Origin: Fimbriosthenelais zetlandica
Taxonomy: Eukaryota
NCBI GenBank assembly: GCA_977030845.1
Contig: CDRPQX010000016.1
Coordinates: 248,001-312,000, forward strand
Direction: 5' to 3'
Length of the DNA: 64,000 bases
The position numbers were made by a program, and so were the translations under genes. The notes under the pieces were generated by a model. That model had not been told where the DNA came from. It was given only the letters and a program-made list of their open reading frames with translations, and did no database searches. Below, piece after piece: positions 344 to 23,128 of the stretch. Numbering within the stretch: the stretch's first letter is position 1; the number at the start of each line of letters is the position of its first letter.

Positions 344-813
344 ATGGCGCAGCCTAAGGACGACCGTTTAGATAGAGTGCGTGTATTTAACCACCACGCT
401 CTGCCTATAATCGACACCCCGTTCACCCGCCTGTCTGAACACTGGTTCACCAGGCAGCACGGACCGTGTCGTGACTGGGAGATGGACTACATGAGATGCT
501 CCAGTCGTGTAGGTCACAAACACGAGGAGACACTCTGTCAAAAATACTTCGAGGATTGGCGAGAGTGTGTGTACAAGACTAAAACTGTGAGTGTCTGACA
601 TATAGGCTCATCCCGACATGAAATTTAATGTATACGGTATTTATAATGTATGTGATATTTATCAGTGATATATTATGATATATATAATTGATGTGATATA
701 TATTTATTATTCAGGCTCTTCGTTATGAAGCCATGCACAATGAGCGGGTGAGACAAGGCGCGGCCTTCAAGAAACCCCCGCCACCTGATAGTGTCGACGT
801 GCCGGTATATTAG
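344..813 (+). CDS. NDUFS5: NADH:ubiquinone oxidoreductase subunit S5 (complex I 15 kDa subunit), 2 coding exons (344-586, 715-813), about 113 aa
   Basis: Twin CX9C motif (C-RDWEMDYMR-C ... C-QKYFEDWRE-C); phase-0 gtgagt donor at 587 and ttcag acceptor ending 714; exon 2 ALRYEAMHNERVRQGAAFKKPPPPDSVDVPVY* has the PPP tail typical of the family; AATAAA at 995-1000. Confidence 0.85.
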
Positions 814-6223: not shown

Positions 6224-9200
6224 ATGTTTGGGTTCCGTCGCTATAACCGGGGCTTCCCGTCCTTTGATGATTTTGATGATTTCTTCGGTCATCGTCCTAC
6301 GATCCGTGACACGGGACGAGGGTCCAGTAAACGTAGCACCATGAGGTACGAGGCTAATCATGCTCCTTATCCTGCTTCACAATGAGTTATACAACCATTA
6401 TCCTGCTTCACAATGAGTTATACAATCATTATCCTGCTTCACAATGAGTTATACAATCATTATCCTGCTTCACAATGAGTTATACTATCATTATCCTGCT
6501 TCACAATGAGTTATACAATCATTATCCTGCTTCACAATGAGTTATACAATCATCCAGTCAGCTCCTTATCCTGCTTCACAATGAGTTATACAATCATTAT
6601 CCTGCTTCACAATGAGTTATACAACCATTATCCTGCTTCACAATGAGTTATACAATCATTATCCTGCTTCACAATGAGTTATACAATCATCCAGTCAGCT
6701 CCTTATCCTGCTTCACAATGAGTTATACAATCATTATCCTGCTTCACAATGAGTTATACAATCATTCAGTCTGCTCCTTATCCTGCTTCACAATGAGTTA
6801 TACAATCATTCAGTCTGTTCACATTAACTGTATAGCATCGATGTACAATGATATAACTACAATATCTAACCCACTCTCTCCCTCTCTCTGTGTGTAGGAA
6901 GCGGAGGCCTGCCGGGTACGAGGAGCCTCAGACGTACGAGGAGATTAAAGCCCTACACGTGGAGGAAGGCTCGTTGTACGAGGATCCGGACTTCGGGGCT
7001 GAGGACAGCTCTCTGTTCTTTAAAACCCCGCCGTCCTGCTGGCCTGACATAGAGTGGCTGCGACCTCATGTAAGATTTACTCCATGTCTCTATCTCTCCT
7101 GTAACACTGTACACTTTATACAACTTCTTTTCCCTTCTATATCTGTCTCTCTCTGAGAATGGATTCACGATGGCTTGTCTGTAGATTATATCCCATCAGG
7201 CTGTACATTCTGTAACCTGTCTCTTCTTGTCATCAGGAGATCTGTGGGGAGCCTGTCCTGTTCGCCGAGGGCGCCAGTAGGATGGACGTCAACCAGGGAG
7301 TTCTGGGTGAGTGCTGAACTCTCAGTCTTCATGATTTTCATCTCACCAGTTTTCTATTTGATATATCACAATATCTTCCTACTTTATCTTGTGCCATCTG
7401 CTGTTATTGAGACTCTCATACATTAGCAGCTATCATTTCGTCACGGTGACCTTGTGTTTGACCTTGTAGGTGACTGCTGGTTGCTAGCTGCTGTAGCTTC
7501 CCTAGCAACCAATGAGAAGTTACTTCACCGTGTCGTTCCCCCGGACCAGTCGTTCAGTGAAGATTACGCAGGTAGGAAATAGATGTATTAATGGTTTAAA
7601 ATATGATGCCTGGATGTCAGAGTAAAGTGAAGTGAGACGTGATGAATGTGGCGTGAAGTAGGCTCATATCACACTCTCAGAGGTGATCATAGATAACAGA
7701 CACTATGATAAGAATGTTTATAGTGAGAGAGTCACTATCTCATCTCTCACCTCTCTTCACCAGACAGGATCACAGAGTTCATCTAAGAAAGAGAAATGTT
7801 TTGTCTTTTAAACACATGAAAATGATGTCTGTTTGTAGGTATATTCCGGTTCCAGTTCTGGCAGTATGGACGGTGGGTGGAGGTATTTATTGATGACAGA
7901 CTTCCGGTGAGTGGAGGGAAGCTGTGCTACATGCATTCTACAGACAGGGATGAGTTCTGGTCAGCGCTGGTGGAGAAAGCCTACGCCAAGTAAGTGACAT
8001 GTACACGGCATCGTAATACTATTATAATCTCCCAACTGGTAATATCTCACTATTGTGGCCTGGTGCTGGGTCTTATTCCATCCATGATTAATGTCATACT
8101 TTCAGGTTGAATGGATCATATGAAGCATTAAGTGGAGGTCTGACGTCTGAAGCTCTAGAGGACTTCACGGGAGGAGTGGTGGAGAGGTTTAACATGGCCG
8201 AGGATCCACCAGAGGATCTGTGCAGCATGATGCTCAAAGCTCAAAAACGAGCACTCATGGGGTGCTCTATAGACGTGAGTAAAAGTGGACAGCTTTGATA
8301 TTATAAAGTTATCATTATGTTGACTGATTCTCCTCCTGTTTATTGACTGATTCTCCTCCTGTTTATTGACTGATTCTCCTCCTGTTTATTGACTGATTCT
8401 CCTCCTGTTTATTGACTGATTCTCCTCCTGTTTATTGACTGATTCTCCTCCTGTCTGTTGACTGATTCTCCTCCTGTTTATTGACTGATTCTCCTCCTGT
8501 TTATTGACTGATCCTTCTGTTTGAATGTTTCCAGGCGTCACCAGATCAGATGGAGGCTCGTCTTGACAACGGTCTCATTATAGGTCACGCCTACAGCGTC
8601 ACTGACGTCAAAATGGTGAGTGACGTCACAGCTTGACGTAATGTCTTTATCTGTGTCTTTGATCTTCCTGTAGGCCTATGAGTTACATGTTGATATCTAG
8701 ACGTCAGAGAACCTCTAGATAATAATCCTTCTTCATAACCTCCTAATAACCTCTCATGACCTGGTAATGACCTCTGTGTTGACCTTGTAATGACCTCTGT
8801 GTTGACCTTGTAATGACCTCTGTGTTGACCTTGTAATGACCTCTGTGTTGACCTCTAACAGGTTGATATAGAGACACCGCGGGTGTCGGGTCGTATACCG
8901 ATGGTCCGTGTGAGGAATCCATGGGGCGACGAGCACGAGTGGAAGGGAGCCTTCAGCGACGAGTGAGTAAAGATTATAGGCATATAATATAGACAGTAAT
9001 GTCATCAATGTCTCTCATGTCAGCCATGTCTCTTTAAGTCTCTTGTCAGCCATGTTAACTCTCCCTTTCTCTCCTCTAGTTCTGAAGAGTGGCAGTTCAT
9101 CCCTGAGGACGCTCGTGAGGAGATGGGGCTGACGTTTGATCATGACGGTGAGTTCTGGATGGCCTTCCAGGACTTCTCTAAAGAGTTCCAGCGGTTAGAG

Positions 9201-12200
9201 ATCTGTTACCTGGGTCCTGACTCCATCCTGGAGGGGGACGAGGTGGACGAGGAAGCGCTGTCTGAGATCAGGAAGTGGGAGGGCACGCTTCACGAGGGCT
9301 CGTGGAAGTGTCGTATCAACGCGGGCGGCTGTAAAAACTACTCCTGTAAGTGATAAACTCTAACTCCATCTCACATCCTCAAACATCCTTCTCTCTCATC
9401 CTGCGTTAGAATGTTTATGATTCTCTCTCATCCAGCGTTCTGATGTTTATGATTCTCTGTCATCCAGCGTTCTGATGTTTGTCTGTCTTTCTCTCTCTCA
9501 TCCAGCATTCTGGACGAACCCTCAGTATAAGATAGAGATTGAGGAGGGAGATGATGATGACGATGACGGGCTGTGTTCTATCGTCGTCGGTCTCATGCAG
9601 AAAGAACGAAGAAAGATGAGAAAAGAAGGCAAAGACAATCTGGCTATAGGCTACACCATATTTGAGGTGAGTAACCGAACACAACCTGGCTGTATAAAAG
9701 ACTAGAAACTCTCCTCATGTGAGGACTATCTCTCTCTGTCTCTCTATGTCTCTCTCTAATCATCTCATGTCTCTATTTCTCGCCTGCAGCACGAGGAGGG
9801 AGCCCGTCTTACCCCTCGTTACTTTAACTCTCGTCAGCCCATAGCTCGGTCTAAGAACTACATCAACCTGAGGGAGGTGTCAGAGCACCACAAGCTGCCC
9901 CCCGGTCACTACATCATCATGCCCACCACATTCGAACCCAACCAGGAGGCGGAGTTTATACTGAGAGTCATGACAGAGAAACCTAACCCTACAACGTGAG
10001 TAAAGCTAAAACTAAACCCAACCCCACAACGTGAGTAAAACTAAACTCTAAACCCTAAACATAAATCCAACCCTACAACGTGAGTAAACCTAAAACTAAA
10101 CCCTAAACATAAATCCAACCCTACAACGTGAGTAAACCTAAAACTAAACCCTAAACATAAACCCAACCCTACAACGTGAGTAAACCTAAAACTAAACCCT
10201 AAACATAAACCCAACCCTACAACGTGAGTTATTATAAAACTAAAACCCTAAATCGTACCTGACATGAGTTACATTATTATATAATAATGTGTAATATTGT
10301 TACAGGGAGATTGACGAGGAGACGACCATGGGAGAAGAGGTGGTGAGTAGACCACTTGTTATACAGTCTATAATGATGGGTGGTGAGTAGACTACTTGTT
10401 ATACAGTCTATAATGATGGGTGGTGAGTAGACTACTTGTTATACAGTCTATAATGATGGGCGCTTATAGAGCTACACAGGCTCCACCCAGCGGACAGAGG
10501 GATGGATACTGTATCTATACATTCAGTCTATAATGATGGGCCTTATAGAGCAGGCTCCACCCAGCAGACAGAGGGATGGATACTGTATCTATACATTCAG
10601 TCTATAATGATGGGCCTTATAGAGCAGGCTCCACCCAGCAGACAGAGGGATGGATACTGTATCTATACATTCAGTCTATAATGATGGGCGCTTATATAGA
10701 GCTACACAGGCTCCACCCAGCGGTCAGAGGGATGGATACTGTATACATTAACTGACCATCTCTCACCTACATGTCCTCAGTGTTCCCCATCTCAGAACTT
10801 CTCATTATGATCTATTTTCAGAACCGTGAGAACCAGGTAAACTATGCTGACATTTAAGGCTAAACGTAATGACATTATTCCCTCCTACATTACATGACAT
10901 TGACAGTCATACGTTGACAGTCACATGTAACAGTACCATGAACATTATAACAGTTTTGACGGTACTTTAGGCCACTGTTGTACTGTGACAATATCATGTA
11001 AAGTTGACATGAATCCTGCCCCGAGCCCTCTTCTACCTCTTACATATATATACAATGTCCTCCTCCTCAGTTCCCTGCCCATCTCCACCTCCCCACCACC
11101 CCATGTCCCATGTTAAGTTTAATCATATATAAGTATAAAGATATAAGATCATGTTTATATCAAGCTGTACAGAAGGCCGTGTTTTAGTAAGCGCCGTTTT
11201 GCTCGCTTTCTTTACATAAAACCCCTGACAACTTACTGAACAATATCTCAGGTTGTAAAGGGTACTTGATACTTCCACGTTAATGACAACTACTGACCTT
11301 GACAATTACTCACAGTGACCTTGACATTAACTAGGATGACCTTGACATTAACTAGGATGACCTTTATTGACCTTGGTACTGTGATGTGGACTTTGTTAAT
11401 GGTGACTTATTGACAATGATTGAAGGAATTAAAACTTAACCTCCAACCCGCGACATGAGACAAGCGGCGACCTCAGTAACCTAATACACTAATGTGACCT
11501 TGATTTGACCTTCAGGATGAGGACGAGATGCCTGAGGACACGGATGAGGACGGGGAGAAGATGGAGGCCGCTAAGGAAGCGTTCCGTGAGGCGGTGGGTG
11601 GAGACGGGGAGGTGGACGCGTACGAGCTCAAAGAGATACTCAACGGCGCCATCACCGGAGGTGAGGGGAACTAACCTTATAGTCAGTATAGACAATAGGT
11701 GTGGGGGGTGGGGGGGTCTAGGCAGGGTACGAACTGAAAGAGTCATCATATCAAGGTCAACCCACGGAGGCACAGTTACAACCCTTCATACCATTACCAC
11801 CTATAGCATTGCTGCATGTTGTGTCTTGGTCACCTTTAGATTTCTATCTATCTATTGTTTGTTTTACAGATTTTGTGTTTGATGGGTTCAGTACAGACGT
11901 GTGTCGCAGCATGGTGGCCATGAAGGACGTATCCTTAACTCAGTATACCAAACATAACGTGGGCTGTCTAACTTACAGTAGATCAATATACTCAACATAA
12001 CGTGGGCTGTCTACCACACAGTACATGAGTAACTCACATAGTCAATGTTTCACTACCACAGTGGTCAGTACACGAGTGGCCAATGTTTGAATATTCATCC
12101 ACTTATAATGACCAGTTTCACATGTAGTGTGTCTACTTTACAGGGCTTTCAGTAACCATCATGGGGCAGGGGAGGGTTGTAAATCTAACATTATTAAAGG

Positions 12201-14823
12201 TCTAGTGATCAGGTAAATCATTCTGAGAGTGAGTCCTTGACCAGGTGAAGGTGGACCTGTCAGGTAAACTGGACTTCTCGGACTTCCTGGGACTGTGGAA
12301 CGACCTCCACATGTGTAAGGTACGTAAACTTTAATAACTCCCTCCCCAAACTTGTATGACTGAATGTTCATGGTTCGCACCCAGTGGCAGAGTTGTTATC
12401 TTATATTTTATATTTTATATTATTACAGAAAATCTTCAAGAAGATGGACACGGACGGTAACGGTTACTTCAGTAGTTACGAGTTCAGGCTCGTGCTCAAC
12501 ACCATCGGTGAGTTTATACGTCAATAGTTTACTACAGGTTTATATGAGAATTATTACAAGCTCTAAACGACACAGGTCTTTATAGGTCACAAACTGGCGA
12601 ATAAATCCATCACAATTATATGTAACAATAACATTATAATTCATCTAGTAATACAACCATTATTTATTAAATATTAAATCAATTCACTTGCCAAATCCCA
12701 GTGTTTAAGCAAAGATAAAGGCTTTAAACTGACAAAAAATATAAACTAAACTATCTAAATGTAAATCATAATATTGGTCAGTATCTTGACAGTAGGACTG
12801 AATTGTCTCCCTCTCCCTTGTTCTCTTATTTAAGTTAGTTTTAAATTGTTGTGACATGAATGCATGTTATAGAGTTAGATTGTTCAATGTATGCTTAAAT
12901 GTTGTTGTCAAAAATATATTTGATATTCCTAGCTAGAAATCTGTGTCAAAAGAAGTTAGTTGAAAAAACAAGTGGACGGAATTCCTCCCGTTATAATACT
13001 ATTCATGGAAATCCACTGACCCGCCTAGTTTATAGAGCACCTCATTATAATAGTTATAGTTACTCATTTGCATAATTTATTATTATTTTTTTCCTCACAG
13101 CGACTCATGTACCTGAGATTAAAGGTACCCTGTCTTCCTCTACTCCTTCTCTTCCTCCTTTCTCTCCCTCCTCTTCCTCTCTTCCCTCTCTTCTCCACCT
13201 TTTAACCCCTCATTTCACCTATTATCGCTCACTGCCTGCTCTCCTCCATCTTTGGCTCTCACTGTTTTTTTCTTTACTTTAACCTTCACCCTGACCGACT
13301 CTCACTGAAGTCAAGACGAATATTAGACTAAGATGTGTTTTAAATCTTCTTAAACTTAAACATGAGTGTTATATGAGCTGAACATTTTAACATTAAGATG
13401 AGTTTTTGAGTAGTTTTAATGCTGGCGTTGCTTTAGGAGTGTAATTACATTATCTAATGCCGTTAGTTTGGTCTAGCAGTGAGTTTTAATTCCCCTCTAG
13501 CTGCTAGTTCGTTTTAGCAGTGAGTTGTTCTTCCTCTCTGGCTGCTGGGGTCATGTATTTAAACCTCACTTTATTCAGCCTGCCTATATTTTGCTTGCTA
13601 ATTTATATTTTATATTAATTTTTAACCAGAACTATTTTACTTGGTCGTTCTGGTGGGGAGCGCCCTCTATTCCTATACCACACGTCTGTAATGATACATA
13701 TAGACTATATATAACCACCTGTATATGCTATATGCTATCATTACCCTTTATTTATTATTTTATTTATTTACGTATCCTTTATTGACCTTGTACTGGACGT
13801 ACATAAGGTGTTGGATTGCTGGTATAACCAGTGGACAGTTTATCCCCCCCCCCTGCCAAATCCCTGTATATTTAATTTATTTATCTTTAATTATATTTAT
13901 TTATCATAATTTATTGATTACTTCTAAACTAAATGCCTGTCCCCAAGGCGTTTGATATGACATTAGGCCTATTTGGCCAGACGAGTGTGCGTGTTGAAGT
14001 GTGTAATCTAACTTGAGTGGTTTATGTCTTTAATGTTTTTACTTGCTCCCTTTACTTCTAGTTTTACTTCTTGTTATAGTTGGACTATATGTTAATGTTA
14101 AACACCAGCCGTGTATGACTGGTGTATGTAGTAATAGAACCTCCCTCTATACGTGTAGACGGCATGTTATACATCTATGTTATTGACTGACGTTATCATA
14201 ACGTTATGACACGTTATAGCACGAGTCACAGACAGTCTGACGTTATAGTTCACACCAGTAGTACCCCACCTCTCATCTCTCTACCTGTAATTCATGGTCA
14301 GAGCCCCGGCCTCCCCTCTCAGGCCTATTGATTTATTATAATATAATATTTTAATATTTTATTTTATTTTCCAGGTTTGAGAGTCAGTAACTCCACGTTT
14401 AACGCCGTGGTTTTACGGTACAGTGACAAGGAGGGTCACGTGGCCTTCGATGACTTCGTGGCCTGCGTCATCAAATTAAAATCATTATTCTGTGAGTACA
14501 ATATATATTATACTGAGGCGCATTTATATATTATAATGAGGCGCATTTGGTGCTATTCTAGTGTCATCATGTATTAATATTCTATGTATTTTTAATGTTT
14601 TAGCGTCGTTCAAAGAGAAGGATGAGGAGGGAGCGGGGGAGGCGGGCTTTGGTATGGACGAGGTGAGGTTAACTTACATCATTTAAACTGAAGATAAGGG
14701 ACAACGTACTGACAACTAACTGACAAATTACTGACAAATTACTGACTTTAAGCAACCATTTTCATCATTTACAATCTTGTCATTTGTTTTTTACAGTTCA
14801 TTCAGCTGACCATGTATTCATAA
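6224..14823 (+). CDS. Classical calpain large subunit (CysPc + C2-like + penta-EF-hand), about 730 aa, 19 exons
   Basis: Exons 6224-6345, 6898-7069, 7237-7306, 7470-7571, 7839-7989, 8106-8274, 8535-8615, 8862-8962, 9080-9345, 9506-9666, 9790-9995, 10306-10342, 11516-11660, 11870-11928, 12251-12319, 12429-12507, 14375-14491, 14604-14662, 14797-14823 join in frame (2193 nt). Catalytic motifs [18 protein letters not shown] and RNPWG; also [14 protein letters not shown]2[21 protein letters not shown], and EF loops [12 protein letters not shown] and [12 protein letters not shown]. Exact orthologue (CAPN9/CalpB-like) not assignable by eye. Confidence 0.93.
6367..6815. repeat. 31-bp intronic minisatellite (about 13 copies, with short interruptions) in calpain intron 1
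   Basis: Unit ttatcctgcttcacaatgagttatacaatca, starting just after the donor at 6346. Confidence 0.9.
8322..8520. repeat. Short-unit intronic minisatellite upstream of the calpain His-exon acceptor
   Basis: Repeated ttgactgattctcctcctgttta running up to the acceptor at 8534. Confidence 0.85.
9985..10230 (+). repeat. About 48-bp tandem repeat containing the calpain exon end and donor (6 donors)
   Basis: acaac|gtgagt at 9996 (functional), 10031, 10080, 10128, 10176 and 10224. Confidence 0.85.
10822..10836 (+). other. Candidate 15-nt frame-preserving microexon (NRENQ) in the calpain C2L-PEF linker
   Basis: tctattttcag|AACCGTGAGAACCAG|gtaaac; the flanking exons end (10342) and start (11516) in phase 0. 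Confidence 0.45.
11929..12250 (+). other. U12-type (minor spliceosome) GT-AG intron in the calpain PEF region
   Basis: 5'ss GTATCCTTAAC at 11929; branch site TCCTTGAC at 12234-12241, about 10 nt from the AG; no polypyrimidine tract; splicing yields the EF loop MKD|VDLSGKL. Confidence 0.9.
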
Positions 14824-16713
14824 AGCGACCATCAATCCCACAATGCCCTCTCCCGGTAATGACGTCACTACCCATGGACCAATGACCAGCCCCCGTCCAT
14901 CACCCGCAGCCAGATACAAGCTTGATCGTGATTGGTCAATTACTGAGAGGAAGAGAGGGTGGAAGAGGAACCTATCCTAAACTATAATGACTGATAATTA
15001 TTATCCCAGTTATCCTGCAGTCTGTACATAGAAGGAATGACGTTATATGTGAATTAGTGGATCATGAGAGACGCAGAGTATAGTGGTAACCAAGGTGGTA
15101 ACCAAGGAGACACCCTGTAACTAGGCTACGTGTTACTGTGTCTTCATGTCATACTAGGGCCCCGTTAGCCCTCATTATTTTTATACAGTTTATCTCCTGT
15201 TTTCTAGCGTCCATTTTGTTCAGAAGAATTTAAAGATATTATTGTTAGCAGCCAAAGACAACTAACCGTATCTTTATATGAGAGGTGGTTTACATGGCGC
15301 TCACTAGGTGGCTGGTTGTCATGACAACATGTGTTAATGTTTCTCTATGTGATCTGTATATAGCTTGCCACGTTTTGTAATCTTTAATTTACAGTTTAAT
15401 TAGAACAATAGAGGTTTATATGATTAGTCTGTTTTTGTGACCATGTTTTCTGCTATTCCCCACTGGCTACATAACACGACTTTACGGTAGCTACATTACA
15501 TGACTTTACGGTAGCTACATAACACGACTTTAATCTCAAGGACAAACGACAAGTTTCCATGACTACCGCGATGTTATTATACTGTCTGGGTATTCTAGCC
15601 TTATATTCTCTCATTTACATCCTGTCATTATCTTCTGTCGTTAAATTCTAACGTTACATTCTGTCGTTACATTCTATCGTCATATTCTCGTTTTCTCGGG
15701 TCTTGATGTGACCCATCGTTCAGACCATGGCTACATCCCACAAAGTCTTTCATAATCCAGAGCTTCCCAGTAAGATGACAGGAGGATTATAACAATACAG
15801 GAGGATTATACCAATAAGGAGGATTATCACATGTTAATCCTGCCCGTCTATATGTGCCTTATGTCAACTTTATAATCTACAATCTTGACATTAACATTAA
15901 ATACGTTTATAACAAATACATCTCCTTGTGTTTTAATGTTCTTCGCGTACTGATATAGCCTATAATTCAATCCCCGTTATGACTTTATGTCATAAGTACA
16001 GGTATAGGTGGAACCCAGGACCTTCCTCCAGCATTACCCTAACATGTCATACCTGATTAGCCGTCACTGTCAATAGAGATGAGTCATATTGACAGTGACA
16101 TATCATGTTATCAATAATCAATCATCATAATCAATAATAAACAAGATAAGATCAGAGTTTAATCTATAACTAACTCTCTCATGTCTAATCAGCCCCCTTC
16201 ACCCACCCACGTCTAGTATTGATATTGTGATATCACGGCACCAGATCAAACGTCTACAAACATCCTCACCGCTCTCTCTCCACAACTTATCTCACTCTCC
16301 ACCAACACAGGTCATTATTTTTATAACAACTTTAACTTATAGAACTATACATCAGTCTACAGGGATCCTTGGTAATTCTCAGCTCTAGGATCATATATTC
16401 TCAGCTCTAGGATCACATTCGCAACTCTCTGCTGAGGACAGTTGTGTTCCATGACATCAGGAAGATATCAGGATTAAGATTTATAAGTTTAACCACTATA
16501 TATGTTGTGAAGGTGGACGTTATAAAGATCATCAGGACTTGTAAGGCCCGCTGCGAGCAGGAATAAACATCTGTACGCCCCCTGTGAGGAGGAGAACACA
16601 CCTGTAAGGCCCTCTATGAGCAGGAGAACTAATTAAATCTGTGTAGTTCTTGATAACGCCACATGATGTCTTTGTGGTGCTCACGGCTGTGTGCTTACTT
16701 CCCCTGCTGTCCC

Positions 16714-18582
16714 ATGACGACCAGCAGGAACAAGGTAAATAATAATAATACCCTAGGTCATTACTGAATGAACAAGGTAAATAATATCCAAAGTCATTAC
16801 TGAATGAACTGTTGAACAAGGTAAATACTACACAAGGTCATTAGTGAATGAACAAGGTAAATAGCCAAGGTCATTACTGGTGACCAGCAGGAACAAGGTA
16901 AAGCCATTGTAGCTCTAACATGACTTAGTGAGCACATTGCTCTGGTATTTGTAAATGATGTGTAATAATGCATCATTGCAGCCACAGACAGAGGACGTGG
17001 CTCTAGATACTCGCACCTCCTCCACTGACGTCATCACCGGACCCCCGGGGTCTCCTGTAGTTCCCCCGGCCACCACCAGGCGATCACAGAGCGCCCTCTC
17101 ACAGCTCTATGGTAAATTCACATCACGTGACCAACCTGAGCTGGACCAGAAGCAGCTCCATGACCTGCTCAACGGTTACTTCATCACTGGTATGCCAGGG
17201 TTAATATAAACTCATATTATAATGTAGGCCAGGGTTAATATAAACTCATATTATAATGTATGCCAGAAGCGAGAAACTGCCAAATGAAGGCCTGATCAAG
17301 AATGGGGGTTTGGACCTGAAATCTGTATTAAGAACCTGCCCAGTATTTATGGTACCCTGAACAATGTTGTCTCATGGTTTTATGTTTTGTTGCAGGTTTT
17401 CATTTTGAAGGATTCTCTCACGATATGTGTCGTAGTATGATCGCCATGAGGGACGTATCCTTTATACGACAGTTAATAAAAACAAGTTAAACTTAAAGCC
17501 AGCCAGCTCCTCATGTATCCTTTATACGACAGTTAATAAAACAAGTTATTAAAGCTGAATGTAAACTCCTCAAGGCCACGGGTGTTAGTAATCAGGGTAT
17601 GGGGGGATGGTAACTGTATCATATAATCATGTTGTTATACCTTGACCACTGTCCAGGCTGACCAGTCTGGTAAGATGGGATACACAGAGTTCCTACACGT
17701 GTGGCAGGACCTGGAGACTTGGCGGGTGAGTGTGGGAGACTTGGCGGGTGAGTGTGGGGGGTGGGTGAGTGTGGGAGACTTGGCGGGTGAGTGTGGGTGG
17801 TGGGTGAGTATGGGTGACTTGGCGGGTGAACATGGTGGGCGGGTGTGGGTATTTCTGAATTAACTCATCTTGTGATAAGGTAATATAAAACCTCAATGTT
17901 TCAGGAGGCGTTCAGGGTAAGAGATGTAAATAATGAAGGTCACATTGACAAGTCACAACTAGAGGGCATCCTCCACTCACTCGGTGAGTCCTCTATGTAC
18001 ATTACTGCTGTCTTACCATAGATTAACCCTTGTCTCCTTCTAGCCTTCATAATATGATACTGTCTGCTATTGCCCTGATTAAACTATAAACCCCGTCATG
18101 TCTGTTACAGATCTTGCTGTCAGTGAGAGGACTGTCACAGCTGTCAGTGTCAGGTACAGTGACAGACGTGGCCATGTTAACTTTAGTGACTTTGTGTCTG
18201 CCGCTCTCAAACTCCAGCTCATGAGAGGTGAGTGATAACTGGGGACATTCAGTGATTGTATATTAGTCTGCTCGATCTATGATCACATTAAATGTCAAAC
18301 ATCTTATTATTATTCATCAGAGACGTGGAGGTGTGCGGCGGGTCCGGGAGAGGAGACGGTGAGATTCAAGGTGGATGAGGTAAGTCATCAGGCAGATTAA
18401 CATCGCCTCTATACCGCTACAACCCAATGTTATGGGAGGGAGTTTAGGATATAAGACCCACTTACAAGCCCTGACACCTATATATCTACATGATCAGTGT
18501 TAAATGTCTGTCATATCTACATGATCAGTGTTAAATGTCTGTCATATCATTTCAGTTCATTCAGCTGGCGCTATATGCCTGA
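16714..18582 (+). CDS. PEF-only calpain paralogue (small-subunit/sorcin-like penta-EF-hand protein), about 212 aa, 8 exons
   Basis: Exons 16714-16734 (MTTSRNK, less certain), 16982-17189, 17396-17454, 17657-17725, 17905-17983, 18111-18227, 18321-18379, 18556-18582. The last six exons match the calpain's last six in length and phase (59/69/79/117/59/27 nt); about 40% aa identity by hand alignment (GFSHDMCRSMIAMRD, RYSDRRGHVNFSDFV, DEFIQLALYA*). No protease exons found between 14823 and 16982. Confidence 0.85.
17455..17656 (+). other. U12-type GT-AG intron in the PEF-only gene, homologous to calpain intron 11929-12250
   Basis: 5'ss GTATCCTTTA at 17455; branch site ACCTTGAC at 17639-17646 ahead of the ccag acceptor ending 17656; same codon position (MRD|ADQSGK). 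Confidence 0.9.
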
Positions 18583-19599
18583 TCAGCGAGTACAGCATGA
18601 AGGCTGGTGTGTGAGGATGAGTACAGCATGAAGGCTGGTGTGAGAGGATGAGTACAGCATGAAGGCTGGTGTGAGAGGATGAGATGGGGCGAGGGTTGAT
18701 GGACTGCTTCTATATGACAGATCATTATTATTGTCTCCGATTTGAATTCATTAAACATTGTTAACTAAAAATATCAATCCTTACAAATAATACGGGAAAC
18801 ATACCCTGTGTATAGTCAACTCATGTCATGTAATAAATGTGGAGTGTAAGATATACATGTAAACTTCATGTCGTTTATCATGTGACTTGTACTTGTTTTT
18901 ATTGACTTCTCACAGTCAGCAGATCTTACTGAGATAAGCTCATGTCGCCTTATACCAGGCAAGGCTTGACATTATTATTAACACTATCTGCTGATTGAAC
19001 TTATTAACATCTGGTTCAACAATAGCACTGCTTAATAGGCCAAAAACAGGCCAAAACCAGGCCAGCACCAGGCCAGAACCAGGCCAGAACCAGGCCAGCA
19101 GTGTTACAAGTATTAGAGTCATTAAGCTGAGATGTGTTTACGTCAGCTTCTTGTAGTGACTGTCACACACTTGATGTTAAGAGGGAGGTACACGAGTCAA
19201 CCAGACCTGTATGAGTGGCTCAGACCCGCCTGAGTGGCTCAGGACTAGGATCACTTCATCAAGACTTGTTACAAGAGCTTCTGGGAAAAAACTGTTATTA
19301 TTGACTTCCTCAATGCAAGACATGGTCCAGGAGGGAACAGTTTAACACCAGGCGCCTTATATATCACAATACATATACCACCAGATATACCAGCAAATAT
19401 ACCAGTATATACCAGCAAATATACAAGCAGATATACTAGTATATACCAGCAAGTATAGCAGTATACTGCAATTTACAGTGAACAGTCATACCACTCAAGC
19501 TATATACAAAGTACAGAATCCAAAGGCTTAGATTATATACCAACATATTCAGCAAGAACTTGTTAACAGATCTGCTCAGTACCTGAGACCCAGTGCATA

Positions 19600-20820
19600 A
19601 TGAGTGACATGTCTGACTTCAGTAACAGTACTGGTAACTTCGCCACGTCTGAGATCATCCGTACCTCAGTCTCGTGTTTGGGGGTGGTGGGTAACATCCT
19701 CTCATTCCTCATCTTTAGTCGGTCTACGTTCAGTAGCTGTGGTTACTCTGTGACGTTACGTGTACTAGCGTTAATGGATATAGGAGTATTAGTGGTGTAT
19801 AACACTATAGCCATCCACCACACCGCCACTAACCCTGTCCCCATCACAGTACAGGACGGCCAGCTCAACCTGGTGGGCTGCTGGATCACTATGGGCTTCG
19901 CGGTGTCATCAGCCTGGATGATTGTGACAGTGAGTGTTGACAGACTAACAGCGGTACTGTCACCGTTCTACGTTAAGATCATCTTCACCAGGAAGCATAA
20001 CCTGCTGGCGGCCGTCACTGTCATCATCATCGCCTTCACCATCAGCTCACCTACAGCCTTCATACCACCAGAACAAGGCGACGCGTACGCCTACCCGCAG
20101 GTGTTCGCGTTCAGTTACTTCTTCATACCGTCAGTGTTGATCAGTGCGTGTAACGTGGGGCTAGCCGTAACGTTAGTCCGCCGTAGACAGCTGGGTCATC
20201 AACGTATAGAGAATAAAGGCATCCACGTTATGTTAGCCGTTAACAGTACTGGGTTCATCATCCTCACCCTGCCTTACCCCGTGTACGAGACGCTATCCAC
20301 AGGTACGTGTATCGACCTCACCACACGTAGCTGGCTGCTCATCATACTGGGGCTGAATCACATGTTAAACTTCCTACTATACGGGATCAGTGGTCAGCAG
20401 TTTAGACACGAGCTCAGACTCATGATGTGTGGACGCTGTGACACGGCCAGCGGTCAGTCTGTGACGTCATCAACGTCACTCAGCCGTCAGAAGGTGGTCA
20501 GTGTCACGTCCAGTATCTCCAGTACTACCATCATGGGTGGTATCTATGACAACCCCAGTATCCATGACAACTCGGGTATCAGTGACAAGACAGGGATGGA
20601 CAACCCAGGGCTGGAAGATGGCAACCCAGGAACCAATGACAACCCGGTTATCAAAGACAAGCGGAGAATGGACATGGAGGGCGGTATCCATGACAACCCA
20701 GGACTGGATGTGAAGGGCAGCATGAAGGGTGGGGTGGATGTGAAGGGCAGTATGAAGGGCAGCATGTATGACAACCCGGGTTTAGACCTGACAGATGAGG
20801 ACATTAACATCAGGTTCTAA
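19600..20820 (+). CDS. Intronless rhodopsin-class (class A) GPCR, peptide-receptor/Srw-like, 406 aa
   Basis: Seven hydrophobic segments; TM1 GN, TM2 LALMD, TM3 SAW..V.VSVDRL, TM5 FIP, TM7 NFLLY followed by helix 8 FR; N-terminal NST sequon. Confidence 0.9.
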   Translation: MSDMSDFSNSTGNFATSEIIRTSVSCLGVVGNILSFLIFSRSTFSSCGYSVTLRVLALMDIGVLVVYNTIAIHHTATNPVPITVQDGQLNLVGCWITMGFAVSSAWMIVTVSVDRLTAVLSPFYVKIIFTRKHNLLAAVTVIIIAFTISSPTAFIPPEQGDAYAYPQVFAFSYFFIPSVLISACNVGLAVTLVRRRQLGHQRIENKGIHVMLAVNSTGFIILTLPYPVYETLSTGTCIDLTTRSWLLIILGLNHMLNFLLYGISGQQFRHELRLMMCGRCDTASGQSVTSSTSLSRQKVVSVTSSISSTTIMGGIYDNPSIHDNSGISDKTGMDNPGLEDGNPGTNDNPVIKDKRRMDMEGGIHDNPGLDVKGSMKGGVDVKGSMKGSMYDNPGLDLTDEDINIRF

Positions 20821-21718
20821 AATCCTCAATGGAACTCCCAAAGATATATATTCATAAACTTGTATCTAACATTCCATAATCTATCACAGAACCCTGAATA
20901 CCAACCCTGAAACCCTAGCATGGATCCGCCGACTAATAATCTTAATTTTTGTGTTTAGATTGCTCTATTGTCCATGTAATGAAGGGAGGAGGTTGATTAG
21001 TCTGGAGCTTGATTAATCAGATAAAGACTCCCTGATTAGAAACGTTATCAGGACCAGCTCACTCTACCACAATCTGAGACGATCTGTGTGTATTAATAAA
21101 TAACAATATAATCTAATAGAGCTGAGCCTGGGCGTCTACCTGGATGAGTTATGATACTAGAGGAGTTAGAGAGGCCAGGGATGTTGACAGACAGGCTGAC
21201 CTTTACCTGTCGTCATGACGTCACTACGCGTTGTCAGGGGGTTGCTAGGAGAGCGTGAAGGAAGTGCTTACACGTGATGATAATAAGTCTCACCTTATCA
21301 CCTTATTACCTTAACCTGCCTTATTACAGTAAGGTATGAAAGCATCTCATGCTAGCTTCAGCCTACATGACCAGCGTCAGCCTATACAAGGCCTACCTCA
21401 CATACCCTCTACTTCTGACAATTATACATGGACAAGGACATCTTACACGCCCTCAATAATTGCTGGCTGGCCTTGCTGACTGTTTGACCATATAGTTTAT
21501 CTACACTCTACCCTACACATCCTCAACATCTACTTGACCATTTAACCAGCACTGATGGACTATACACAGCCTCAGTAACTGACCATCAGTAGGACTATGC
21601 CTCATCTTAGCCTCACTCATACCTGACCTGGACTGGAGTGATCTATTCTATATACAGCCTGAGGACCTGTCATTTAACAGTTTACACCATGGTGATACTA
21701 CTGGGTGATATACGCACC

Positions 21719-23128
21719 ATGAATGTCTCTAGTAATGATACGCGTACGTTCGCCGTATCAGAGCTGGTCCGTATGTCGTTCTCGGTGTTAGGATTACTGG
21801 GTAACTCTCTGTCGTTCCTGGTCTTTAGTCGCCCCGCCTTCTGTCACTCCGGGTTCTCTGTCACTCTGCGCGTCCTGGCCGCGTTAGATACCGGCGTGAT
21901 TATAATCTATAACACCATCTCTATACACCACACCCTGACCACCACCACCCCGGTCACTGTACAGGACGGTCAGCTGAATGTAGTAGGTACATGGATGGTG
22001 TGTGTCATGGGGACAGCCAGCGCCTGGATGATAGTGACAGTCAGTGCTGACAGACTGACAGCGGTACTGTCACCTCTCTACATGAAGATTATCTTCACCA
22101 GGAGGAATAGTCTCCTCCTGGCTCTCTCCATCCTCCTCCTCTCATCCCTCCTCCTCCTCCCCATCCTCCTCCTCCCCCCGGGCCCCGGGGATAGCTTCGC
22201 CTTCCCCTTCATCCTGGCGCTCGGGTATTGCATCATCCCGTCAGCCGCCATTGCTGGATGTAACGTGGGGCTAGCCGTAACGTTAGTCCGCCGTAGACAG
22301 CTAGGTCATCAACGTATAGAGAATAAAGGCATCCACGTCATGTTAGCTGTTAACAGTACGGGGTTTATCATCCTCAGTCTACCCTTCCCCATGTACGAGG
22401 CGCTCTCCACACAGACGTGTATAGATCTACCCACACGTAGCTGGCTGCTTACCTTCACCGGACTTAACCACGTACTCAACTTCCTACTGTACGGCCTCAG
22501 TGGCTCCCTCTTCAGGCGTGAACTTAAACTGATGGTGTGTGGACGGTGTGTGAATAAAGTGAAACCCGGGGCTGAGAAGGTGAGCAGGAAGAGGTCTAAC
22601 ACTAGTGGTGGTACACGGAGTACACTAGCTGGCCAGGGCGGCCCTAAAGCTGACAATCAGAATAATAAAACCAGCCTAAAAACCGGTGGTCAGAATAATA
22701 AAACCAGCCTAAAAACCGGTGGTCAGAATAATAAAACCAGCGTAACAACTGGTGGTCAAATTAATAGCATCCAGTCTACTGTAAGTCCTGGGAGTAGAGG
22801 AACTGACCAGGCCAGCAGTAACACCAGCAACACCAGCAGTAAAACCAGCAGTAACAGAGGCAGTAACACTAGTAACACCCGTACGACTACATGTATTGAC
22901 AGCGCGTGTACTAGCGCCACTATTACAGACATAGAGAGTCCCTGTAACGACTGTAACATTACAGACATAGAGAGCCCCTGTAACGACTGTAACATTACAG
23001 ACATAGAGAGCCCCTGTAACGACTGTATGATTACAGGCATACAGAGACAGGCGGGCTGCAGCAGCTGGCTGGAGGTGCCAGGAAGTACACACCATCATTA
23101 CCTAGCGGTGGAGGAGCTAAACAACTAA
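21719..23128 (+). CDS. Second intronless rhodopsin-class GPCR, tandem paralogue of 19600-20820 (about 469 aa; alternative ATG at 21689)
   Basis: GNSL, LAALD, SADRL and NFLLY motifs; N-terminal NVS and NDT sequons; collinear with GPCR1; repetitive Ser/Thr/Cys-rich C-tail. Confidence 0.9.
   Translation: MNVSSNDTRTFAVSELVRMSFSVLGLLGNSLSFLVFSRPAFCHSGFSVTLRVLAALDTGVIIIYNTISIHHTLTTTTPVTVQDGQLNVVGTWMVCVMGTASAWMIVTVSADRLTAVLSPLYMKIIFTRRNSLLLALSILLLSSLLLLPILLLPPGPGDSFAFPFILALGYCIIPSAAIAGCNVGLAVTLVRRRQLGHQRIENKGIHVMLAVNSTGFIILSLPFPMYEALSTQTCIDLPTRSWLLTFTGLNHVLNFLLYGLSGSLFRRELKLMVCGRCVNKVKPGAEKVSRKRSNTSGGTRSTLAGQGGPKADNQNNKTSLKTGGQNNKTSLKTGGQNNKTSVTTGGQINSIQSTVSPGSRGTDQASSNTSNTSSKTSSNRGSNTSNTRTTTCIDSACTSATITDIESPCNDCNITDIESPCNDCNITDIESPCNDCMITGIQRQAGCSSWLEVPGSTHHHYLAVEELNN

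What the first reader, a model, noticed from the sequence alone, without database searches (positions are those of the whole stretch)
16714..18582. Protease-less penta-EF-hand calpain paralogue directly downstream of a classical calpain: candidate invertebrate calpain small subunit
Seen: 1.9 kb after the calpain stop, a same-strand gene repeats the calpain's last six exons with identical lengths and phases and the same U12 intron, at about 40% aa identity. It has no CysPc or C2L exons. Instead it has a Pro/Thr/Ser-rich N-terminus (TSSTDVITGPPGSPVVPPATTRRS). It keeps the C-terminal EF5 helix (DEFIQLALYA), one canonical loop (DADQSGKMGYTE) and one degenerate loop (DVNNEGHIDKSQ, Q at position 12). 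Established: vertebrate CAPN1/2 heterodimerise with the PEF-only CAPNS1 through EF5, and Drosophila calpains have no recognised small subunit. Inference: this locus could be a linked catalytic plus regulatory-subunit pair, either an independent origin or a cryptic CAPNS orthologue. Shared exon sizes show calpain-family descent, not necessarily a recent duplication.
Basis: partly seen in the sequence, partly recalled or inferred. Interest (0 to 1): 0.8.

Follow-up and report, generated by a model that had tools for sequence, protein, structure and literature searches.

The report
Protease-less calpain calcium-domain gene copy
Just downstream of a normal calpain protease gene lies an old, intact copy of only its calcium-binding tail, which could be an invertebrate counterpart of the vertebrate calpain "small subunit", but nothing yet shows that it is expressed or binds calpain.

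Summary
At 16982-18582 (+) seven exons mirror the last seven exons of the upstream classical calpain (6224-14823). Six have identical lengths and phases (59/69/79/117/59/27 nt). The same U12-type intron is present. Identity is 39% over 153 residues with no gaps. The reading frame and all splice sites are intact. Simulated neutral substitution kept the frame open in only 8 of 2000 trials, so the copy has been under selection.

No protease or C2L exons lie between the two genes. Two of the three main calcium loops (EF1, EF3) carry Gln instead of the chelating Glu. EF2 and the EF5 tail are kept.

The copy is old. It is equally distant (39-40%) from the orthologous calpains of three species, which are 67-71% identical to each other. 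One relative (L001) has no such copy in the 4 kb downstream of its calpain.

Not shown: transcription, the proposed 21-nt first exon, binding to calpain, and any specific kinship with CAPNS1. The neighbouring calpain's own exons also hit CAPNS1 first in the PDB. An alternative 3' exon set for the calpain is phase-compatible and not excluded. Most likely this is a stand-alone penta-EF-hand dimerisation partner. Its small-subunit role remains a hypothesis.

The parts
6224..14823 (+). Upstream classical calpain gene (CysPc with Cys/His/Asn, C2L, PEF). It is colinear with a 731-aa calpain cDNA of a relative.
   Evidence: Open frames and motifs [14 protein letters not shown] and RNPWG. Pfam Peptidase_C2 on exon pieces. 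tblastn with L008.
10307..10343 (+). Calpain linker exon that ends in phase 0. It could in principle splice in frame to paralogue exon E2.
   Evidence: Sequence read.
11516..14823 (+). The calpain's seven PEF exons (145/59/69/79/117/59/27 nt). A U12-type intron runs from 11929 to 12250.
15896..16141 (+). First poly(A) hexamers after the calpain stop (ATTAAA at 15896, AATAAA at 16136). They mark the likely end of the calpain 3' UTR, about 0.5-0.8 kb before the paralogue's ATGs.
   Evidence: The 3' UTR of the L008 cDNA is at least 976 nt.
16663..16734 (+). Hypothetical first coding exon. ATG at 16714 gives MTTSRNK. In-frame ATGs at 16663/16666 give MMSLWCSRLCAYFPCCPMTTSRNK. The donor is AAG|GTAAAT. 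Unverified.
   Evidence: The 3' end is part of the minisatellite at 16744-16879.
16982..17189 (+). E2 (208 nt). It encodes the Pro/Ser/Thr-rich N-terminal stretch and a degenerate EF1 (TSRDQPELDQKQ). It is homologous to the calpain exon 11516-11660.
17396..17454 (+). E3 (59 nt).
17455..17656 (+). U12-type intron. The 5' splice site is GTATCCTT. A CCTTGAC branch motif lies 11 nt before the AG.
   Evidence: The same intron is present in the calpain here and in L001.
17657..17725 (+). E4 (69 nt). It holds the canonical EF2 loop DADQSGKMGYTE.
   Evidence: matches PROSITE PS00018.
17905..17983 (+). E5 (79 nt). It holds the degenerate EF3 loop DVNNEGHIDKSQ.
   Evidence: (EF-hand_1 16.5 bits, against 28.8 for the calpain's EF3).
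18111..18227 (+). E6 (117 nt), EF4 region.
   Evidence: (CAPN13-like_C_EFh, E = 0.0011).
18321..18379 (+). E7 (59 nt), EF5 loop.
18556..18582 (+). E8 (27 nt), FIQLALYA followed by the TGA stop.
18750..18837 (+). Poly(A) hexamers after the paralogue stop (ATTAAA at 18750, AATAAA at 18832).

Best explanation
An old partial tandem duplication copied the last seven exons (the whole penta-EF-hand domain) of a classical calpain. Selection has kept the copy intact.

Most likely it is transcribed from its own start just upstream of 16.7-16.95 kb. The product would be a protein of about 24 kDa with a short Pro/Ser/Thr-rich N-terminus and five EF-hands. EF1 and EF3 have lost the chelating glutamate (both are Gln), so calcium sensing is probably reduced to EF2, possibly with EF4. 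The EF5 helix pair that all PEF proteins use to dimerise is retained.

The protein would therefore act as a non-catalytic dimerisation partner. The simplest partner is the PEF domain of a classical calpain such as its neighbour, which would be small-subunit-like. Otherwise it pairs with itself.

Shown: the anatomy, the descent from a calpain PEF, the signs of selection, the loop changes, the age of the copy, and its absence downstream of one relative's calpain.

Inferred: independent transcription, dimerisation, and any effect on calpain.
For: - Seven homologous exons with identical phases. Six have identical lengths. The U12 intron is shared.
- 39% identity with no gaps. dN/dS is about 0.5 with dS about 1.15. 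The frame stayed open in 8 of 2000 neutral simulations. There are no indels and all splice sites are canonical.
- No protease or C2L exons lie between the calpain stop and E2.
- The calpain has poly(A) hexamers 1.07 and 1.31 kb after its stop, before the paralogue. An orthologous cDNA has a 3' UTR of at least 976 nt.
- In-frame ATGs are available at 16663, 16714 and 16955.
- EF1 and EF3 have Q at -Z, where three species' calpains keep E. EF2 matches PS00018. The C-terminus FIQLALYA is of calpain type.
- The best PDB hits per exon are CAPNS1 and calpain-1, ahead of sorcin and grancalcin.
Against: - There is no expression evidence of any kind. No RNA run was listed.
- E1 is a 21-nt model that chance could produce.
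- No orthologue was found. An exhaustive phmmer search with E2 returned only low-complexity proteins. A word search with E6 found no candidates. A JGI metagenome scan found none.
- A relative (L001) has no second PEF set in the 4.08 kb after its calpain stop, although the duplication looks older than the species split.
- The N-terminus is not the Gly-rich domain of CAPNS1.
- The loss of two calcium sites differs from CAPNS1.
Confidence: 0.5

Rival explanations
1. Alternative 3' cassette. The seven exons are not a separate gene. They are a second, mutually exclusive PEF domain for the upstream calpain, reached by splicing from the linker exon (10307-10343, which ends in phase 0) to E2 (which starts in phase 0). 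This would give a calpain isoform with a calcium-poor PEF domain and a longer linker.
For: - The phases are compatible, and E2 keeps the ancestral acceptor position of the calpain's first PEF exon.
- No independent first exon is demonstrated.
- Unchecked notes from this scan report duplicated, interchangeable EF-hand exons in other genes of this genome.
- Aplysia classical calpains are alternatively spliced in the C2L-PEF linker (PMC5650170).
Against: - It would need a skip of seven exons, including a terminal exon with its stop, and a 3' UTR of 1.1-1.3 kb with poly(A) hexamers. The splice would span 6.6 kb, against a competing acceptor only 1.2 kb away.
- The E2 acceptor has a weak pyrimidine tract.
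- I know of no precedent for swapping a whole PEF domain in calpains (from memory, not tested).
Confidence: 0.22
2. Stand-alone PEF calcium sensor unrelated to calpain regulation. The protein would be sorcin- or grancalcin-like in function, forming a homodimer that binds other targets. Its position next to a calpain would only record where it came from.
For: - PEF proteins commonly form homodimers through EF5 (reference to Maki et al. 2002 cited in PMC5650170).
- Sorcin scores about the same as CAPNS1 for E6.
- The copy is ancient and was lost or moved in a relative. That is easier to explain if it is not an obligate calpain subunit.
Against: - Two of the three principal calcium loops are disabled, which is odd for a sensor.
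- The exon structure, the U12 intron and the C-terminal motif are of calpain type.
- E4 scores higher against CAPNS1 and calpain (20.7 and 20.5 bits) than against sorcin (16.8).
Confidence: 0.15
3. Silent or recently dead relic. The duplicated exon block is no longer expressed, or never was on its own, and looks intact because it decayed only recently or by chance.
For: There is no RNA evidence, no detectable orthologue, and no copy downstream of the calpain in one relative. Minisatellites invade several of its splice junctions.
Against: - At 44% nucleotide divergence the frame stays open in only 0.4% of neutral simulations.
- There are no indels in six exons.
- Fourteen canonical splice sites are kept, including the rare U12 signals.
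- The calpain gene has the same kind of junction minisatellites.
Confidence: 0.1

Closest known systems
Vertebrate calpain small subunits CAPNS1/CAPNS2
   Same: Both are a PEF domain without protease or C2L parts, and both descend from a calpain PEF. E4 and E6 give CAPNS1 as the best or joint-best PDB hit. EF5 and a calpain-type C-terminus are retained.
   Different: - The N-terminus is Pro/Ser/Thr-rich, not Gly-rich (3 Gly in 58 residues).
- EF1 and EF3 lack the chelating Glu.
- The gene lies next to a calpain gene.
- Nothing shows specific kinship, because the neighbouring calpain's own exons also hit CAPNS1 first.
- Heterodimer formation is untested.
- The literature places the origin of CAPNS within vertebrates and finds no invertebrate small subunit (PMC5650170).
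PEF(L) domain of classical calpains (the neighbouring gene and its orthologues in L001 and L008)
   Same: Exon lengths, phases and the U12 intron are identical. The alignment over 153 residues has no gaps. The motifs CRSM(I/V)AM, RYSD..GHV.F.DFV and DEFIQL..Y are shared.
   Different: - Identity is only 39-40%, while the calpain orthologues are 67-71% identical to each other.
- No catalytic exons are attached in the genome.
- EF1 and EF3 are disabled, whereas EF2 is more canonical (E at position 12, against D in the calpains).
Sorcin and grancalcin (group II PEF proteins)
   Same: They are small stand-alone PEF proteins with a flexible N-terminal extension. The PDB score for E6 is comparable (18.1 bits).
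   Different: The score for E4 is lower (16.8 against 20.7 bits). The C-terminal motif is of calpain type (recalled from memory, not tested). No phylogeny could be run.

Membership tests
Penta-EF-hand family, calpain subgroup | About 170 residues with five EF-hand units, colinear with known calpain PEF domains | tested here: met
   The alignment with the PEF domains of three calpains runs 153 residues without gaps. Pfam hits on single exons are weak: EF-hand_1/6 and CAPN13-like_C_EFh, E = 0.0011-0.05.
Penta-EF-hand family, calpain subgroup | Calpain-type exon-intron structure of the PEF domain | tested here: met
   The exons are 59/69/79/117/59/27 nt with the same phases. The U12 intron is at the same codon boundary as in the neighbouring calpain and in L001.
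Penta-EF-hand family, calpain subgroup | Unpaired EF5 that mediates dimerisation | not testable with these tools
   The EF5 sequence and its hydrophobic pattern are kept.
Calpain small subunit (CAPNS1/2) | PEF-only product, with no CysPc or C2L domain | tested here: inconclusive
   No protease or C2L exons lie between 14824 and 16982. The transcript structure is unknown, because no RNA run was listed. In-frame splicing from the calpain is possible.
Calpain small subunit (CAPNS1/2) | Gly-rich hydrophobic N-terminal domain | tested here: not met
   The N-terminal 58 residues hold T 10, S 8, P 6 and only 3 Gly.
Calpain small subunit (CAPNS1/2) | Orthology with vertebrate CAPNS in a PEF phylogeny | not tested
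   Reference PEF sequences could not be fetched, because exon pieces fall outside the length window of the protein search and the spliced protein has no reference. Per-exon PDB scores show no CAPNS1-specific affinity.
Calpain small subunit (CAPNS1/2) | Heterodimer with a catalytic subunit through EF5 | not testable with these tools
   Needs co-expression or co-IP, or a multimer prediction.
Calpain small subunit (CAPNS1/2) | Calcium binding at EF1-EF3 | tested here: not met
   By sequence only. EF1 is TSRDQPELDQKQ and EF3 is DVNNEGHIDKSQ, both with Q at -Z. EF2 is canonical.
U12-type (minor) intron | 5' splice site RTATCCTT and branch motif TCCTTRAC 10-15 nt before the 3' splice site | tested here: met
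   GTATCCTT is at 17455 and 11929. CCTTGAC lies 11 and 10 nt before the AG. The intron is conserved in L001 at 5821. Calpains are known minor-intron genes in mammals (PMC8767276).

The most novel reading that the evidence does not exclude
An invertebrate lineage independently evolved its own calpain small subunit. A calcium-poor PEF-only protein, born from the 3' end of a classical calpain and still linked to it, would heterodimerise with that calpain through EF5 and control its stability or calcium threshold. This would be a convergent re-invention of vertebrate CAPNS1.
Probability: 0.22. Interest if true: 0.75.

Novelty: new variant of a known kind. Interest (0 to 1): 0.5.

Why it matters
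Vertebrate calpain-1 and calpain-2 need the PEF-only subunit CAPNS1. [quoted passage not shown] A selectively maintained, protease-less calpain PEF gene next to a classical calpain is a concrete candidate partner that can be tested directly by co-expression. If it does bind calpain, it would show that small subunits arise repeatedly by partial duplication of the 3' end of a calpain gene. It would also provide a natural variant in which the chelating Glu of both EF1 and EF3 is replaced by Gln, useful for studying calcium activation. If it proves to be an alternative 3' cassette, it would be the first calpain known to swap its whole PEF domain. The weight of the finding is limited by the lack of any expression data and by its absence downstream of the calpain in the one relative that could be examined.

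Tried and rejected
- RNA evidence. Two searches for sequencing runs, one with the whole gene and one with E2 alone, listed nothing. Read laying could therefore not be used.
- Exhaustive phmmer with E2 (69 aa) against 1.84 billion representatives gave three low-complexity repeat proteins and no relative.
- The protein atlas with E2 gave only generic EF-hand clusters below 0.9.
- Neighbouring GPCR used as an anchor for synteny. Exact look-ups were not on record. The best homologues are 41% identical. So this lineage, and this genome's own proteins, are absent from the collections.
- A word search with the E6 frame found no candidates.
- A JGI scan with E2 patterns found none. E6 alone was too short for that tool.
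- Per-exon PDB searches, intended to separate CAPNS1, calpain and sorcin, did not discriminate. The neighbouring calpain's exons behave the same way.
- Rfam and tRNA scans of the window were empty.
- Earlier notes of this scan hold nothing on this locus.
- One literature search was badly designed and gave nothing useful. The vertebrate classical-calpain phylogeny paper does not mention small subunits.
- A recent lineage-specific duplication was considered and rejected. The paralogue shares no excess of derived states with its neighbour (9 sites against 10; quartet counts 3:4:1).
- An assembly or haplotype artefact was rejected, because nucleotide identity is only 56%.
- Not done: a PEF phylogeny, a structure or multimer prediction, and full-length searches.

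Full report
**1. What is in the sequence**

I rebuilt both gene models from the raw sequence.

The upstream gene (about 6224-14823, + strand) is a complete classical calpain.
- Its exons encode the catalytic Cys (GDCWLLAA), His (GHAYSV) and Asn (RNPWG), a C2L domain and a PEF domain.
- It is colinear with a 731-aa calpain encoded by an intronless, cDNA-like metagenome contig of a relative, L008.
- Its PEF domain is split into exons of 145, 59, 69, 79, 117, 59 and 27 nt.

The downstream unit begins 1.9 kb after the calpain stop.
- Its exons are 208, 59, 69, 79, 117, 59 and 27 nt (16982-18582), with the same phases throughout.
- All donors are GT and all acceptors AG.
- In both genes the first 59-nt exon ends at GAC|GTATCCTT, and a CCTTGAC motif lies 10-11 nt before the acceptor. 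This is a textbook U12-type intron.
- Only six RTATCCTT sites occur in the 64 kb on both strands, which is no more than chance. Two of them sit exactly at these homologous exon ends.
- The translated products align without a single gap over 153 residues, at 39.2% identity. Nucleotide identity is 56%.
- The 731-aa calpain probe finds nothing between 14.5 and 17.4 kb, so no protease or C2L exons precede the copy.

- The 208-nt exon E2 is itself the homologue of the calpain's first PEF exon. It has the same phases and is 63 nt longer. The copied block is seven exons, the whole PEF domain plus its acceptor.
- EF1 is degenerate as well as EF3.
- The proposed first exon (ATG 16714, 21 nt) has no support beyond being possible. 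In-frame ATGs also exist at 16663/16666 (MMSLWCSRLCAYFPCCP...) and, without splicing, at 16955. The 3' end of E1 is the first unit of a minisatellite.

**2. Is it alive?**

- Nei-Gojobori estimates give dN 0.57, dS 1.15 (near saturation) and a ratio of about 0.5.
- I let the calpain sequence drift by random substitutions to the observed divergence. The frame stayed open in 8 of 2000 trials.
- There is no indel in six exons, and the rare U12 signals are kept.
- The copy has therefore been under purifying selection for most of its history. A very recent death cannot be excluded.

**3. How old is it, and is it shared?**

The protein collections hold nothing from this lineage.
- The neighbouring single-exon GPCR is not on record, and its best relatives are 41% identical.
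- An exhaustive phmmer search with E2 found only low-complexity proteins.
- A word search with the E6 frame found no candidates.

The calpain's own 117-nt exon did find fragments, and these led to host DNA in metagenomes.
- L001 is a 15.6-kb scaffold of a relative. It carries the orthologous calpain with the same six exon sizes and the same U12 donor.
- The L001 calpain's last exon ends at 11535 (FVQMTMYA*).
- The 4.08 kb downstream holds no second PEF set, even at tblastn E up to 100, and no second U12 donor.

The paralogue is 39.2%, 39.9% and 39.9% identical to the PEF domains of the window, L001 and L008 calpains. Those three are 67-71% identical to one another.
- Sites where the paralogue agrees with only one of two orthologues split 9 against 10.
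- Quartet-informative sites split 3:4:1.

So there is no sign of a recent, lineage-specific duplication. The copy predates the split of these species, or diverged too fast to tell. It was then lost or moved in the L001 lineage. It is not a universal invertebrate component.

**4. What the protein would look like**

- It is 212 aa and about 24 kDa.
- The N-terminal ~58 residues are rich in Thr, Ser and Pro and hold only 3 Gly.
- EF1 reads TSRDQPELDQKQ. The three calpains keep ..DGE(V/I)DAYE.
- EF3 reads DVNNEGHIDKSQ, against D.DGNGYF.S.E in the calpains.
- In both loops the bidentate Glu at position 12 is Gln. By established EF-hand chemistry this change weakens or abolishes calcium binding.
- Pfam agrees for EF3: EF-hand_1 scores 16.5 bits, against 28.8 for the calpain's EF3 exon.
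- EF2 (DADQSGKMGYTE) is the only loop in the four sequences, besides L001's EF2, that matches PROSITE PS00018.
- The EF4 region (RYSDRRGHVNFSDFV) and the EF5 tail (VRFKVDEFIQLALYA) keep the calpain pattern.

**5. Kinship with known PEF proteins**

The spliced protein has no reference, so only exon pieces could be searched.
- E4 scores 20.7 bits against CAPNS1, 20.5 against a mu-like calpain, 16.8 against sorcin, 15.7 against calpain-3 and 15.6 against grancalcin.
- E6 scores about 18 against CAPNS1, sorcin and calpain alike, and about 13 against ALG-2.
- E5 looks like a generic EF-hand. E2 matches nothing.
- As a control, the neighbouring calpain's homologous exons also give CAPNS1 as the top hit for the 69-nt exon. 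Their scores for the 117-nt exon are far higher: 39 bits for calpain, 33 for sorcin and 31 for CAPNS1.

The paralogue therefore belongs to the calpain/sorcin group of PEF proteins and is a long branch. It shows no CAPNS1-specific affinity. A proper phylogeny could not be run.

**6. How it most likely works**

All PEF proteins dimerise through EF5. CAPNS1 does so with CAPN1 and CAPN2, and other calpains form homo- or heterodimers (statements and references in PMC5650170).

A selectively maintained, protease-less PEF module with an intact EF5 but two disabled calcium loops is best read as a dimerisation partner rather than a sensor.

My leading reading (about 0.5) is a stand-alone PEF-only protein. 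Within that, a calpain partner is somewhat more likely than a pure homodimer.

Weak support for separate transcription:
- The calpain has poly(A) hexamers 1.07 and 1.31 kb after its stop, before the paralogue.
- The orthologous cDNA has a 3' UTR of at least 976 nt.
- The paralogue has its own hexamers 170-250 nt after its stop.

**7. Rivals**

- **Alternative 3' cassette (0.22).** The calpain linker exon 10307-10343 ends in phase 0 and E2 starts in phase 0. Unchecked notes of this scan describe interchangeable EF-hand exons elsewhere in this genome. Against this, it requires skipping seven exons, a stop and a long 3' UTR.
- **Sorcin-like homodimeric sensor unrelated to calpain (0.15).**
- **Silent relic (0.10).**

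RNA junction reads would settle the first and the last.

**8. Comparison with what is known, and novelty**

The nearest known kind is the vertebrate small subunit.
- Same: the architecture and the descent from a calpain PEF.
- Different: the N-terminal domain, the calcium loops, and the physical linkage to a calpain gene.
- Unknown: orthology and binding.

Hastings et al. [quoted passage not shown] Earlier notes of this scan treat this genome as an invertebrate's.

If the gene is expressed, it is a new variant of a known kind. I score interest at 0.5. It is a concrete, testable candidate for an open question, but there are no expression data, no orthologue was found, and it is absent downstream of the calpain in the one relative examined.

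Noticed in passing
window 9979-10252, 10339-10460, 11940-12023, 14502-14548, 16744-16879, 17190-17266, 17455/17515, 17713-17845: Minisatellites start at or within a few bases of donor splice sites and duplicate the donor itself. The U12 donor is included: GTATCCTT is repeated 60 nt downstream at 17515. This occurs in both the calpain and the paralogue. Further repeats abut acceptors (8756-8856, 18482-18548) and the paralogue's stop codon (18588-18683).
   Followed up: partly
window 19600-20820 and 21638-23128 (+): Two tandem intronless rhodopsin-type GPCR genes (Pfam 7tm_1 / Srx-like) with repetitive C-terminal tails. The best database relatives are only 41% identical.
   Followed up: partly
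window 344-592 (+): First coding exon of an NDUFS5-like twin-Cx9C protein (Pfam Ndufs5, E = 3.5e-6), upstream of the calpain gene.
   Followed up: partly
window 16663-16713 (+): If translation starts at ATG 16663 or 16666, the paralogue gains a Cys-rich N-terminus (MMSLWCSRLCAYFPCCP). This looks like a possible S-acylation (membrane-anchor) stretch. It is speculative.
   Followed up: no
L008 407-2602: An intronless 3.6-kb contig from a JGI sample encodes a full 731-aa classical calpain that begins MGQKQS, a possible N-myristoylation motif. It is presumably host mRNA in a metatranscriptome.
   Followed up: no
L001 11536-15619: Downstream of the relative's calpain there is no PEF copy and no GPCR. 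Instead there is a short N gap (about 13.06 kb) and a long minus-strand ORF (14543-15490, with no Pfam hit). Synteny downstream of the calpain is therefore not conserved.
   Followed up: partly
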